Source of the DNA: Bugula neritina
Lineage: Eukaryota; Animalia; Bryozoa
Reading direction: 5' to 3'
Length of the DNA stretch: 64,000 nt
Assembly: GCA_964035545.1 (NCBI GenBank)
Contig: OZ037773.1
Location: forward strand, 9,825,751-9,889,750
Positions 16,355 to 40,467 of this stretch are shown here, piece by piece. The position numbers were made by a program, and so were the translations under genes. Within the stretch, counting starts at the first letter, position 1; every line of letters starts with the position of its first letter. Under the pieces are notes generated by a model, which saw nothing but the letters and a program-made list of their open reading frames with translations, was not told where the DNA came from and searched no databases.

Positions 16355-17380
16355 TGCATTAGTTCAAGATTTATATAGTTTTCTAATAATTTGATGTTAT
16401 TTATAGCAAGAGTTGAAGCTACTCTAATTTGCATGTGCAACTTGGTACAGATTTTATGATTTGATATGACTTCTGCACTGTAATGTTGGTGGTTCTGGCA
16501 TTGGGATGGGAGTTGTCAATCACTGTACTGTTGGTGCTGTCAATAGAGTTAGAATTGTGTGCTCCTGCACTTTTTGCATCAAAATAGGAGTTATGTGTTC
16601 CGGTGGTTCATGTGCTGTTATTGGAGATAGAGTTGTCTTTCCCTGAATTGTAAGTGTTTAGTTTAGCTAAAGTTCTTAGCATGAGGTGTGCTGCATCCAC
16701 CAAACAAATCGGTCAGCGTAAATCATGAGCGAGACAATCACGAATTACAATTATCTAGTTTCTATACTAGTCCAGAAAGTGTCTAAACGATGAGCTCCCA
16801 CTACATGTTTATTCAAACATATCTATTTGAAACTTAATTCGTAGTCCTGAGAAGAGCTATTGAGGTTAAAAAATAACTCATAATACGTGATTGGTTAACA
16901 CTTTTTGTCAATCACAGCAATTGACAATATCTCAGTATGCTGAAAACTAGATTGGATACCAATCAAAGTGATACCACGATCAAAACCTGGATTGTGAAAA
17001 ATTCAGCTATGTGCATTAGAGTGTATAATAACGAGCTTGTTCAACCCTGGAGAGGAGACTGCGGAGTGCCACCAGACTGAAACTCTAACCGAGCTGGAGG
17101 AAGCATTACTTCCCTTGCAGATAAAAACTGAGGCTGATAATGCAGCCAAACATCAAATCCTGTAATAGAAGATACAGAAGGGTAAGGGATAAACCTTCAA
17201 AATTATTCTAAATACTAATGTAACTAATTTTAACTTGCTCATGACCACTCCCATCGACTTATCTTGATAAATCTTATATAGTGACATATTTATATATGTA
17301 TGCTGGTACACTTTTCTTGTGACTATATGCCCATATGCGCATATACTAGGAGCGAATATTATTCATCGCGAGTTAGTGAA

Positions 17381-17520
17381 TAGCTAGACAAAAGTATGTG
17401 GCTGGGCAAATATCAGATATGCTGGGTTTTGCTGTTTATAACTGGTATTGGCGTGTTTATATACTTTTGTTGTAAACTGATAATATACAATATCAAAACA
17501 ATATATGAGTCTAAATGTTA
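17381..17520 (+). pseudogene. Degenerate relic of DEG/ENaC exon 2 upstream of gene A
   Basis: gatatgctgggttttgctgtttataactggtattggcgtgtttatatacttttgttgtaaactgataat...gagtcta matches exon 2 with indels. Confidence 0.8.
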
Positions 17521-18366
17521 TATAGGTGCAAATTAAAAGACATGCAACATCAAAATATTGTAATCTAGGTATTTCTTGCTGAACTTTATAACTTAGGTTT
17601 TTTAAGTTAAAAAAGACTATGGTTTTTACTATTGATAGTCCAATTTTGTGATGCTTTAGCATATCTATGTTATTTTCTCTATGACTAGTTAAAATTATCA
17701 AGTCATATGAACTTAATTTTGTTAAAACAGCCATGACATTCTAAATACCTCACATTATAATAGCCAATCATCTTAAAACTAACGAACATGTGAAAACAAT
17801 ATTGCAGACAAATTATGTTTGAATGCCTGCATGTCAGGTTAACTTTTTTGGAATTTTTGACAAAGTTTTTTTTATTTTATTATAGGCTCATTGATTTGAA
17901 TCATTTTTTGTAGTTTAATAATTATAAAATAAGATATTACATTATAATTATAGAGATCGACTGTTAATTAAACAATCTTTATAATTATATATACTTTTCA
18001 ACCAGTAAACATGTATACACTTATGCCTCAGTTTATCTATATTCCTAGTTCTACCAAAGGTGATAATATATTATCACCTTTCACTATAGTGACGAACAAA
18101 ATGAGTCATGCAAACTGAATTCTTTTAATGCCAGCATCATATTCTTAGGACAAGATGAGAGAGTAGAATATAAAACTAGTAGTATACCCACACAGATGTT
18201 ACAGGTAACAGTGACCTTTGAAAAGATGCATGATTCAGTTGCTTCTTTAAAACTTAACTATTCCAAACAGAATAAATCTGTGTAAATAATCCAACAACTC
18301 TACAATTTTAAGTGAAGAAAACTTTGGTATCTTGAGTAAACCTGCTGAATTTTCTTGACTCTTGAT

Positions 18367-38334: not shown

Positions 38335-38432
38335 ACTGCTAACAAAGTACTAGAGTATAACCTGCAATATGCAATAACTGAACACTATTCATAAGCTATT
38401 TGCAATCCTTCATATAACTTTCTAAATGTCTT

Positions 38433-38575
38433 GCAACTTGAAATTTAGACTCATATATTGTTGATATTGTATTATATTATCAGTTTATAACAGAATTATG
38501 TAAACAAATACCAGTTATAAACAGTAAAACCCAGCATATCTGATGTCTGACCAGCTATATACTTTTATTTAGCTA
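38433..38575 (-). pseudogene. Degenerate relic of DEG/ENaC exon 2 upstream of gene B (paralogue of 17381-17520)
   Basis: Reverse complement gatatgctgggttttactgtttataactggtatttg...gagtctaaatttcaagttg. Confidence 0.8.
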
Positions 38576-40467
38576 TTCACTAACTATAGCGATGAATAAT
38601 ATTCCCTCCTAGTATATGCGCATATAGGCATGCATATAGTCACAACAAAAACGTACCAGCATACGTATATAAATATGTCACAATAAATAAAGATAAGTCA
38701 ATGAAAGTGGCCATGAGCATGTTCAAATTAGCTACATAAGTATTTAGATTTACTTTTATAGTTGTTTATCATCTGTACCATACCGTCTGCATCCTCTACA
38801 GGATTTGATGTTTGGCTGTATTATCAGCTTCAGTTTGATCTATCTCCAAGGGAAGTAATGCTTCCTCCAGCTCGGCTAGAGTTTCAGTCTGGTGGCACTC
38901 CACAGTGTTGTCTCCAGGGTTGAACAAGCTCGTTATTATACACTCTAATGCTCCGTAGCTGAGTTTTTTACAATCAAGGTTTTGATCGTGGTATCACTTT
39001 GATTAGTCCCCAATCTAGTTTTTAGCATACTGAGACATTGTCAAACTGTGATTGACAAAAAGTGTTAACCAATCAAGTATATTATGATTCCTTTTTTAAC
39101 GTCAATAGCTCTTCTCAAGACTACAAATTAAATTTCAAATAGATATGTTTGAATAAACATAATTTGAGCTCATCGTTTAGTCACTTTCTGGAATAGTATA
39201 GAAACTAGATAATTGTAATTCATGATTGTCTCGCTCATGATTTACGCTGACCGAATTGTTTGGTTGATGCAGCACACCTCATGCTAAAAGCTTTAGCTAA
39301 CTAAATATTTACAATTCAGGGAAAGACAATCCTGTACCCAATAACAGCACATAGAGCATCAGAACAGACAACTCCTATCTTGATGCAATAAATGCAGGAG
39401 CACACAACTCTAACTTCATTGACAGCACCAACAGTACAGTGATAGACAACTCCCATCCTTAATGCCAGGACCACCAACATGACAGTACAGAAACCACCAA
39501 ATCATCAAATGCTTCTTAAGGAGCATATGCAAATTAGAGTAGCTTCAACTCTTGCTATAAATATCATCAAATTACTAAAAAAGTATTAATCTGGACCTAT
39601 ACATCCGCAGAGTCATGTGCAATAATTTTGATGTGTTCCAGGTTGAGCTGATGTTAGCTTCAAAAGCATTGGACACCACAGCAGCAATACATTTTTGTGA
39701 TTCAAGTATTACATAATTTATAATATTATTTCTAATCTAATATAGTTAGAGTTAGAAGAGAAAGGCTAAATACACTTTGCTGGTTTGCTATAATCTATAG
39801 TTAAAGCTCAAGAGCTTTTCTCTTAGGCTTTCACAGAGGTTTCAACTGCTTTTTGCCAATGTTGTTTTTACTTCTACATATACAGGATAAATGTCATGTT
39901 ATGTAGTGCAGTACAATTAATAGACTGATAAAAAGCTTATGGATTATTGAATAGCAGCAAACCCTAATTACCACATATGACGTATGCTTTCCATTTACAG
40001 TTGTTTCACTCCATCCATGCTTCTGTGTAAAATTAGGAATTCCAAAATTGTGCTAGTTTATCATTTCAAAAGGTCAGAATAACATTATTACTGTAATACT
40101 GTGTCTCAAATTGGGTCACATCAATCATTTTTAGAGAAACTAAACTGAGGGCACACCAATCCCAATTTAATCCTTTGTGACAAGATAAATTGTATTGGCT
40201 GTAATCCAACAATGACAATAAACCTGGTGTGTCATTTCCATATTGCTGTGGCATACATTATCACCTTAGAGTTTGTTGTATTAGTTGAACTAATGCAGTA
40301 AGGATACAAGTGGCCGACCACTAGCACGTGTTTAGTCTCGTATAACTGGCCTGTTCGTTGAATGTAAACAAAACTCAGTTAGTGTACATCTGCATGCCAT
40401 CACTTTGACAATTGCTACACCGTGCTGAGTTTTAAGAAGACCGACGTGTTAAACTAAAGCATCAAAG

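What the first reader, a model, noticed from the sequence alone, without database searches (positions are those of the whole stretch)
16360..39600. 23-kb palindrome holding two intact, tail-to-tail DEG/ENaC paralogues
Seen: ~10-11 kb arms around a ~1.45 kb spacer, each with a complete 14-exon channel gene and ~2 kb of upstream DNA; both ORFs are intact despite many intronic indels. Established: DEG/ENaC channels are trimers that often heteromerise. Inference: a young, co-regulated channel pair that could form A/B homo- and heterotrimers. This is the best candidate for an undescribed sensory or ligand-gated system in the window.
Basis: partly seen in the sequence, partly recalled or inferred. 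Interest (0 to 1): 0.8.

Follow-up and report, generated by a model that had tools for sequence, protein, structure and literature searches.

The report
Old inverted pair of bryozoan DEG/ENaC genes
A bryozoan chromosome carries a real 23-kb inverted duplication holding two intact, tail-to-tail sodium-channel (DEG/ENaC) genes, but the pair is old, also present in Bugula neritina, and is an ordinary lineage-specific gene duplicate rather than a new kind of system.

Summary
Arms 16360-26692 and 28126-39599 are inverted copies around a 1,433-nt spacer. Each holds a 14-exon DEG/ENaC gene with homologous splice sites and an open 568-aa frame.

- The pair is not young. The arms are 85.9% identical (introns 84.5%, CDS 91.6%, protein 86.4%).
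- The same tail-to-tail pair, with the same retroelement fragment in one intron, lies on an independent Bugula neritina contig. The duplication therefore predates that species split and is not an assembly artefact.
- Both copies are under purifying selection (dN/dS about 0.5-0.6). All 20 cysteines and every hallmark motif are kept.
- Copy A evolves faster than copy B. Replacements cluster in the finger and thumb domains, while the pore is almost unchanged.
- Perfect-identity tracts of 70-149 nt and species-specific shared sites point to patchy arm-to-arm gene conversion.
- The genes are convergent, so they share no promoter.
- Co-regulation, expression and heteromer formation remain untested. 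The one read-laying run gave no splice junctions.

The genome has at least 24 DEG/ENaC genes or gene fragments. This is a new member of a known kind and of modest interest.

The parts
16360..26692 (+). Left arm of the inverted duplication (holds gene A)
   Evidence: collinear inverted match to 39599-28126, 85.9% identity
28126..39599 (-). Right arm of the inverted duplication (holds gene B)
26693..28125 (.). Asymmetric spacer of 1,433 nt, holding the 3' flanks of both genes
   Evidence: its depth in DNA run X1 matches that of the arm contigs
18367..26667 (+). Gene A coding span, 14 exons, 568 aa. Exons: 18367-18465, 18954-19088, 19486-19624, 20649-20839, 21781-21925, 22481-22547, 22848-22951, 23905-24068, 24356-24448, 24842-24950, 25542-25669, 25883-25950, 26132-26219, 26491-26667
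   Evidence: all acceptors are AG; all donors are GT except exon 7 (GCAAGT); single stop at the end
28151..37339 (-). Gene B coding span, 14 exons, 568 aa. Exons (given high to low): 37339-37241, 36781-36647, 36255-36117, 33861-33671, 32761-32617, 32429-32363, 32060-31957, 30967-30804, 30511-30419, 30025-29917, 29286-29159, 28947-28880, 28687-28600, 28327-28151
   Evidence: all sites are AG/GT and exon lengths equal those of A
22848..22951 (+). Gene A exon 7, followed by a GC donor (G|GCAAGT) where B and the B. neritina copy have GT
20649..20839 (+). Gene A exon 4: S/T/N-rich finger segment ending in a polybasic RKKR (aa 170-173)
   Evidence: the same motif is in B, in B. neritina and in the Watersipora homologue P0014
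33671..33861 (-). Gene B exon 4 (same architecture, RKKR)
20725..20873 (.). Longest perfect-identity tract between the arms (149 nt; partner 33785-33637). It spans the 3' part of exon 4 and 34 nt of intron and is a probable gene-conversion patch
   Evidence: B. neritina differs from both arms at about 7 sites in this tract
22943..23361 (.). Intron block where A and B are unalignable but each matches its positional orthologue in B. neritina. This marks the duplication as pre-speciation
   Evidence: 116 'orthology' sites; distance between arms about 0.5-0.6 against 0.11-0.18 between orthologues
34140..35750 (-). GC-rich retroelement fragment (Integrase_H2C2 + rve) in intron 3 of gene B, absent from A
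   Evidence: shared with B. neritina (L007 11642-13134)
17384..17533 (+). TM1-like relic of exon 2 upstream of gene A (partner in B at about 38541-38434, with stops)
26690..27293 (.). Spacer segment next to gene A that is an inverted copy of 14395-15235 (includes a minisatellite)
   Evidence: (I3)

Best explanation
This is a genuine, old inverted (tail-to-tail) segmental duplication of one DEG/ENaC channel gene in a bugulid bryozoan. It arose before the split from the lineage of the sequenced Bugula neritina. Since then the arms have diverged by about 15% at neutral sites, and short stretches have been re-homogenised from time to time by arm-to-arm gene conversion. Both copies keep a complete 14-exon, 568-aa reading frame with every structural hallmark of a DEG/ENaC subunit, and both are under purifying selection. 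Both most likely encode working channel subunits (inference). Copy B is the conservative copy and copy A evolves faster. Their differences concentrate in the extracellular finger and thumb, the parts that bind ligands and modulators in ASIC and FaNaC (from established knowledge). The transmembrane helices and the selectivity filter are almost identical. The most likely working model is therefore two paralogous subunits with the same pore and diverging extracellular sensitivity (inference). Each is driven by its own duplicated promoter. They may or may not co-assemble.
For: Structure: define the arms, spacer and 85.9% identity.
Family: Pfam ASC hits run collinearly along the exons (profile positions 20-455).
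Gene models: both genes have 14 exons of equal length and open 568-aa frames.
Conserved features: all 20 Cys (14 extracellular), HG, FPAV, WPS, GGHLGL and GMS sit at identical positions, and there are two hydrophobic TM segments.
Selection: CDS identity is 91.6% against 84.5% for introns. dN/dS is 0.51 (NG86) to 0.64 (YN00), with the finger at 0.88 and other regions at 0.27-0.62. Of 77 replacements, 49 fall in finger plus thumb (Fisher p = 3.5e-5).
Independent assembly: B. neritina contig VXIV02000974.1 has the same pair, with arms 85-92% identical, the AMP-binding neighbour in synteny and the shared integrase fragment.
Age: the intron block 22943-23361 separates the A type from the B type in both species.
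Gene conversion: outside that block, 84 sites follow the species pattern against 24 orthology sites (p = 5e-9). There are perfect tracts of 70-149 nt, and coding dS is 0.148 between wA and wB against 0.21-0.26 between species.
Asymmetric evolution: lineage-specific amino-acid changes number 24 (wA), 18 (nA), 9 (wB) and 6 (nB).
Copy number: there is no third close copy in the genome; the next paralogue is 67% identical.
Read depth: in DNA run X1 the spacer contig (66.6) matches the arm contigs (62-75).
Against: No spliced RNA evidence exists for either copy. Runs X2 and X3 cover only exon-like pieces, show no joints, and have loose ends inside introns, so they may be a diverged genotype rather than RNA. 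Gene A has a GC donor after exon 7 and the higher replacement rate, so it could be losing function. The B. neritina annotation (KAF6034892.1) skips exon 4. The B. neritina B-type copy also carries a 1-nt insertion in exon 4 and a deletion that removes the exon-12 donor, so loss of one copy is possible in this clade. Contig depth is not a copy-number measure.
Confidence: 0.75

Rival explanations
1. Assembly artefact: two haplotypes of one gene were joined head-to-head, so only one gene exists.
For: Parts of arm B in run X1 differ from the assembly by about 2%, which shows some heterozygosity here.
Against: The arms differ by 14% plus 2.5 kb of indels, a 1.6-kb retroelement fragment and an unalignable intron block. 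That is far beyond the roughly 2% allelic difference seen. The same inverted pair is on an independently assembled B. neritina contig. Spacer and arm contigs have equal depth in X1.
Confidence: 0.02
2. Only one copy works. Gene A (fast-evolving, GC donor, replaced 3' flank) is a transcriptionally silent or decaying duplicate whose open frame is preserved partly by gene conversion from B.
For: A has 24 lineage-specific replacements against 9 in B. Finger dN/dS is 0.88. The exon-7 donor is GC. A's 3' flank was replaced by an inverted copy of 14395-15235, and the only canonical poly(A) signal on that strand lies 1.2 kb downstream. The B. neritina B-type copy shows that members of the pair can acquire lesions.
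Against: There are no stops or frameshifts in 568 codons despite about 8% nucleotide divergence. All Cys and motifs are kept. dN/dS for wA-nA is 0.31, which indicates long-term constraint on the A type in two species. G|GCAAGT matches the usual consensus of working GC donors (established knowledge).
Confidence: 0.12
3. One reading: a co-regulated pair that forms an obligate or preferred A/B heterotrimer, a new ligand-gated or sensory system.
For: DEG/ENaC subunits often heteromerise, for example ENaC alpha-beta-gamma and HyNaC (established knowledge). The pair has been kept together in two species. The pore is identical and the extracellular domains have diverged.
Against: The genes are convergent with separate promoters 21 kb apart. 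There are no expression data. Retention in cis is expected for any local duplicate. One member looks damaged in B. neritina, which argues against an obligate heteromer. No complex prediction was possible, because a trimer exceeds the size limit and spliced proteins cannot be passed to the tools.
Confidence: 0.12

Closest known systems
Bugula neritina locus on VXIV02000974.1 (annotated fragments, including 'SCNN1D' KAF6034892.1)
   Same: It has the same tail-to-tail DEG/ENaC pair, the same flanking AMP-binding gene and the same integrase fragment in intron 3 of the B-type copy. The protein fragment is 90% identical to B and 82% to A.
   Different: The spacer is about 2.5 kb rather than 1.4 kb and is rearranged. 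The annotation splits the genes and skips exon 4. The B-type copy carries a 1-nt insertion in exon 4 and lacks the exon-12 donor. Neutral divergence from the window is about 12-15%, so it is a different species or cryptic lineage.
ENaC, ASIC and FaNaC (DEG/ENaC channels with solved structures)
   Same: All share the ASC domain, two TM helices, the HG motif, FPAV-x-CN, 14 extracellular Cys and a G-x-S filter. phmmer E-values for the B. neritina orthologue fragment are 2e-29 against ENaC gamma, 2e-25 against ASIC1 and 2e-23 against FaNaC. The Watersipora homologue gives 4e-49, 9e-45 and 4e-39.
   Different: The pair is about equally distant from all three, so no subfamily can be assigned. The filter reads GMS, not the GAS of ASICs. 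The finger carries an S/T/N-rich insert with a single RKKR. The ligand is unknown.
Large genomic palindromes kept near-identical by arm-to-arm gene conversion (for example the primate sex-chromosome ampliconic palindromes)
   Same: Both have inverted arms around a unique spacer and genes inside the arms. Signs of inter-arm conversion are present.
   Different: Arm identity is 86%, not above 99%. Conversion is patchy and has not prevented divergence. The arms are 10-11 kb with one gene each.
Watersipora subatra XP_067950290.1 (P0014)
   Same: It is the closest full-length bryozoan homologue found. It has a glycosylation-rich finger insert followed by RKKR, and its TM2 is nearly identical.
   Different: It is only about 40% identical, 664 aa long and has a much longer insert. 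Its genomic arrangement was not examined.

Membership tests
DEG/ENaC superfamily (Pfam ASC, PF00858) | ASC-domain homology along the whole protein | tested here: met
   Exon translations hit ASC collinearly at profile positions 20-67, 63-83, 168-205, 203-260, 297-335, 335-382 and 428-455. Genome six-frame hits lie in both arms. The B. neritina orthologues carry PF00858.
DEG/ENaC superfamily (Pfam ASC, PF00858) | Two transmembrane helices flanking a large Cys-rich ectodomain | tested here: met
   Hydropathy peaks occur only at about aa 38-67 and 522-548. There are 14 extracellular Cys at identical positions in A and B.
DEG/ENaC superfamily (Pfam ASC, PF00858) | N-terminal HG gating motif, post-TM1 FPAV-x-CN, and pre-TM2/TM2 GG-x-x-GL ... 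G-x-S filter | tested here: met
   HG at aa 29, FPAV at 86, GGHLGL at 519 and GMS at 527 in both copies.
DEG/ENaC superfamily (Pfam ASC, PF00858) | Trimeric, amiloride-sensitive, Na+-selective channel activity | not testable with these tools
   This needs electrophysiology. Spliced proteins could not be passed to the structure or complex tools.
ASIC subfamily | Placement in the ASIC clade, proton gating and a GAS filter | tested here: inconclusive
   The filter is GMS, not GAS. Similarity to ASIC1 is no higher than to ENaC. No anchored phylogeny was run. A bryozoan ASIC has been reported from Membranipora (PMC9949801), but its relation to this pair is unknown.
ENaC-type proteolytically activated subunits | Furin-type sites in the finger that flank an inhibitory tract | tested here: inconclusive
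   One RKKR lies in the finger (aa 170-173). It is conserved in A, B, B. neritina and Watersipora. No second site or inhibitory tract was identified, and cleavage is untested.
Gene-conversion-maintained genomic palindrome | Near-identical arms (above 99%) through ongoing conversion | tested here: not met
   Identity is 85.9% overall. Only short tracts of 70-149 nt are identical.
Gene-conversion-maintained genomic palindrome | Inverted arms around a unique spacer, with a detectable signal of inter-arm exchange | tested here: met
   Arms and spacer. Species-pattern sites number 84 against 24 orthology sites outside one block. Coding dS between the arms is lower than between species.

The most novel reading that the evidence does not exclude
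The two paralogues are co-expressed subunits of a heteromeric bryozoan channel. Their conserved finger RKKR site would make the channel protease-gated, as in ENaC, and the fast-evolving finger and thumb of subunit A would tune ligand or modulator sensitivity. That would be an invertebrate parallel to ENaC's proteolytic activation, encoded by a conserved inverted gene pair.
Probability: 0.08. Interest if true: 0.55.

Novelty: new member of a known kind. Interest (0 to 1): 0.3.

Why it matters
The locus is a clean, datable example of an inverted gene duplicate. Two species allow three processes to be separated: duplication age, patchy arm-to-arm gene conversion, and asymmetric protein evolution (conserved pore, diverging finger and thumb). 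It also supplies two full-length bryozoan DEG/ENaC gene models where the public B. neritina annotation is fragmented. It does not reveal a new kind of channel or genetic system. Functional interest depends on expression and electrophysiology that have not been done.

Tried and rejected
1. A 13-exon model needed different exon-4 acceptors in A and B and gave 519 and 512 aa. I replaced it with the 14-exon model.

2. RNA evidence. The look-up of sequencing runs returned one DNA holder (X1) and two runs of unknown kind (X2, X3). Read laying on 24301-30300 showed X2 and X3 covering only exon-like pieces of both copies. There were no splice joints, the contigs carried mismatches, and loose ends lay inside introns. 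The result is inconclusive for expression.

3. The single 'opposite strands' joint 24573/30295 in X1 is an artefact. A contig running off the end of the laid stretch along arm B was placed on the homologous part of arm A.

4. I looked for a second palindromic DEG/ENaC pair at C3:221-222 kb. Only a 147-nt inverted TM2-exon fragment is there.

5. The closest paralogues (C6, 67% identical) do not align in the finger region. They give only weak support for exon 4: an S/T/N-rich open frame ending '...GDL' before a GT.

6. Literature searches for bryozoan DEG/ENaC work found only a mention of a Membranipora ASIC.

7. The Rfam and tRNA scans of the window found nothing.

9. The representative-protein search with one exon returned mostly exon-sized fragments. 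It was useful mainly for finding the Watersipora and B. neritina proteins.
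Full report
**1. Observation**

An inverted-repeat scan of 14000-42000 returned 101 collinear arm pairs. BLASTN and a global MAFFT alignment define:
- a left arm at 16360-26692 (10,333 nt);
- a right arm at 28126-39599 (11,474 nt);
- a spacer at 26693-28125 (1,433 nt).

Identity is 85.9% over 9,630 aligned columns, with 2,547 gap columns. The largest difference is a GC-rich segment of about 1.6 kb in the right arm (about 34140-35750) that replaces about 370 nt of the left arm. It encodes fragments of a retroelement integrase (Integrase_H2C2 + rve). 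The palindrome is therefore real and far beyond chance, but its arms are well diverged.

**2. What the arms encode**

The window is G000:C9:9825751-9889750 of a 216-Mb eukaryotic assembly. A six-frame search with Pfam ASC (PF00858) found 78 exon-level hits genome-wide, including at least 24 TM2 exons. Four hits lie symmetrically in the window.

I built the gene models in steps:
- I used open frames, conservation against paralogous loci fetched from the same genome, and Pfam positions per exon.
- I used a Watersipora subatra homologue (P0014, XP_067950290.1) and a partial Bugula neritina orthologue (P0151, KAF6034892.1), both found through the representative search.
- My first model had 13 exons and needed different acceptors in A and B.
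- An earlier scan note on an identical tract with an RKKR site (s1-444564) made me re-inspect 20600-20900. There is an exon there (A 20649-20839, B 33861-33671), entered in phase 1 and left in phase 0. It joins the conserved acceptor at 21781/32761.

With this exon, both genes have 14 coding exons of identical lengths, homologous AG acceptors and GT donors, and open 568-aa frames. The one exception is A's exon 7, which has a G|GCAAGT donor.

Both proteins keep the hallmarks of the family:
- the HG motif at aa 29 and FPAV-x-CN at aa 86;
- 14 extracellular cysteines (20 in all) at identical positions;
- WPS, GGHLGL and a GMS filter;
- two hydrophobic TM segments.

**3. Organism and an independent copy of the locus**

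The best database relatives are bryozoan. The B. neritina protein fragment is 90% identical to B and 82% to A. Its contig (VXIV02000974.1, locus L007) is collinear with the window in reverse, and it shares:
- the AMP-binding gene flank;
- the B-type gene, including the integrase fragment in intron 3;
- a spacer, followed by an inverted A-type copy.

The L007 arms are 85-92% identical. An independent assembly of a related species therefore has the same tail-to-tail pair, which rules out a head-to-head haplotype artefact.

In DNA run X1, contigs identical to the assembly have mean word depths of 62-75 in the arms and 66.6 in the spacer. The arms are thus not at half the depth of the spacer. Contig depth is a weak measure and I had no flank baseline.

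Only A (100%) and B (91%) match an exon-8 probe closely in the whole genome. The next paralogues are 67% identical.

**4. Age and mode of evolution**

*Divergence and selection.* Identity is 91.6% in the CDS, 84.5% in introns, 85.6% upstream and 86.4% (491/568) at protein level. dN/dS between A and B is 0.51 (NG86) to 0.64 (YN00).

*Age.* I aligned four sequences over exons 5-14 and their introns: window A and B, and B. neritina A type and B type. It shows two things.
- In the intron block 22943-23361, A and B are unalignable with each other, but each matches its positional orthologue. There are 116 'orthology' sites there, so the duplication and the A/B divergence predate the species split.
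- Elsewhere, sites shared within a species outnumber orthology sites 84 to 24 (binomial p = 5e-9), with 15 'cross' sites as the noise level.

*Gene conversion.* Several segments are far more alike between the arms of one species than between orthologues. For example, at 26335-26577 the wA-wB distance is 0.045 against 0.12-0.14 between orthologues. Perfect-identity tracts of 70-149 nt occur in both exons and introns. Coding dS between wA and wB (0.148) is lower than any between-species dS (0.21-0.26). I read this as sporadic arm-to-arm gene conversion acting on an old duplicate.

*Asymmetry.* Lineage-specific amino-acid changes number 24 (wA), 18 (nA), 9 (wB) and 6 (nB). dN/dS is 0.19 for wB-nB and 0.31 for wA-nA. 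The A type is the faster copy in both species, yet it is still constrained.

**5. Where the proteins differ**

Of the 77 replacements, 49 lie in the finger (exons 3-5) and thumb (exons 10-11), which make up 237 of 568 residues (Fisher p = 3.5e-5). Finger dN/dS is 0.88. TM1, TM2 and the filter differ at three conservative positions in all.

In ASIC and FaNaC the finger and thumb form ligand and modulator sites (established knowledge). The pattern therefore fits two subunits with the same pore and diverging extracellular sensitivity. This step is an inference.

Exon 4 encodes an S/T/N-rich stretch ending in RKKR. The motif is conserved in A, B, B. neritina and Watersipora. It resembles ENaC's finger furin sites in kind, but cleavage is untested and only one site is seen.

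**6. Regulation and expression**

The genes are convergent. Their stop codons are 1,483 nt apart, and each arm ends 25 nt after its stop, so the 3' flanks lie in the asymmetric spacer.
- The 600 nt next to gene A (26690-27293) are an inverted copy of 14395-15235.
- The B. neritina A-type 3' flank instead resembles window B's flank. A's 3' flank was therefore replaced in this lineage.
- Each gene has its own duplicated upstream region, so there is no shared promoter.

Expression could not be settled. Runs X2 and X3 (same study, kind unrecorded) cover only exon-like pieces of both copies. They show no splice joints, carry mismatches, and have loose ends inside introns. They could be RNA with pre-mRNA, or DNA of a diverged genotype.

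**7. Caveats from B. neritina**

The B-type copy in that assembly has a 1-nt insertion in a homopolymer of exon 4 and a deletion of about 17 nt that removes the exon-12 donor. The annotators split the gene accordingly. These lesions may be assembly errors (more likely for the first) or real decay. If real, they argue against an obligate A/B heteromer.

**8. Comparison with what is known, and verdict**

The proteins are clear DEG/ENaC members. They are about equally distant from ENaC, ASIC and FaNaC by phmmer against solved structures, so I assign no subfamily. A bryozoan ASIC has been reported (PMC9949801), but its relation to this pair is unknown.

As a genomic structure the locus resembles gene-bearing palindromes, but it lacks their near-identity.

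The 'young' claim is refuted. The co-regulation and heteromer claims are untested. The locus is an ordinary but well-resolved lineage-specific duplicate in a genome with dozens of DEG/ENaC genes.

Noticed in passing
window 20649-20839 and 33671-33861 (aa 170-173 of both proteins): A polybasic RKKR follows an S/T/N-rich stretch in the finger. It is conserved in both copies, in B. neritina and in the Watersipora homologue. It may be a furin-type cleavage site like those of ENaC.
   Followed up: partly
L007 13524-13715 and L007 about 19031: The B. neritina B-type copy has a 1-nt insertion in exon 4 (in a T/C homopolymer) and a deletion of about 17 nt that removes the exon-12 donor. The public annotation splits this gene into 309-aa and 144-aa fragments.
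   Followed up: partly
window 17384-17533 (+) and about 38434-38541 (-): A relic duplicate of the TM1 exon lies about 0.9 kb upstream of each start codon. The B copy has stop codons, so it is probably a dead partial exon duplication that predates the inverted duplication.
   Followed up: partly
window 34140-35750: An LTR-retroelement integrase fragment (Integrase_H2C2 + rve, broken into several frames) lies in intron 3 of gene B. It is shared with B. neritina and is therefore old.
   Followed up: partly
window 14395-15235 and 26690-27293: This is an inverted two-copy segment that includes a 23-nt minisatellite (14559-14912). One copy forms the part of the spacer next to gene A. There are only these two copies in the genome.
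   Followed up: partly
window 61360-62460 (+): A single-exon 366-aa open frame matches a rhodopsin-family GPCR (7tm_1, E = 1.6e-17).
   Followed up: no
window about 39200-51000: This region is syntenic with an AMP-binding (acyl-CoA synthetase-like) gene annotated next to the pair in B. neritina.
   Followed up: no
window 754-1089 (+) and 12171-12443 (+): There is a Fringe-like exon (E = 1.4e-7) and a Tc1/mariner-type transposase HTH remnant (HTH_23/HTH_SB).
   Followed up: no
window 6209-6833, 50662-51741, 56734-57113, 63689-64000: Long (AC)n and (TA)n microsatellites and a 184-nt-period tandem repeat explain the composition and skew spikes in the window.
   Followed up: no
L008 9301-9447 and L009 360-506 (G000:C3, about 221.3-222.3 kb): A 147-nt inverted pair of TM2-exon fragments (98% identical) lies in another DEG/ENaC cluster. 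It is not a full gene palindrome.
   Followed up: yes
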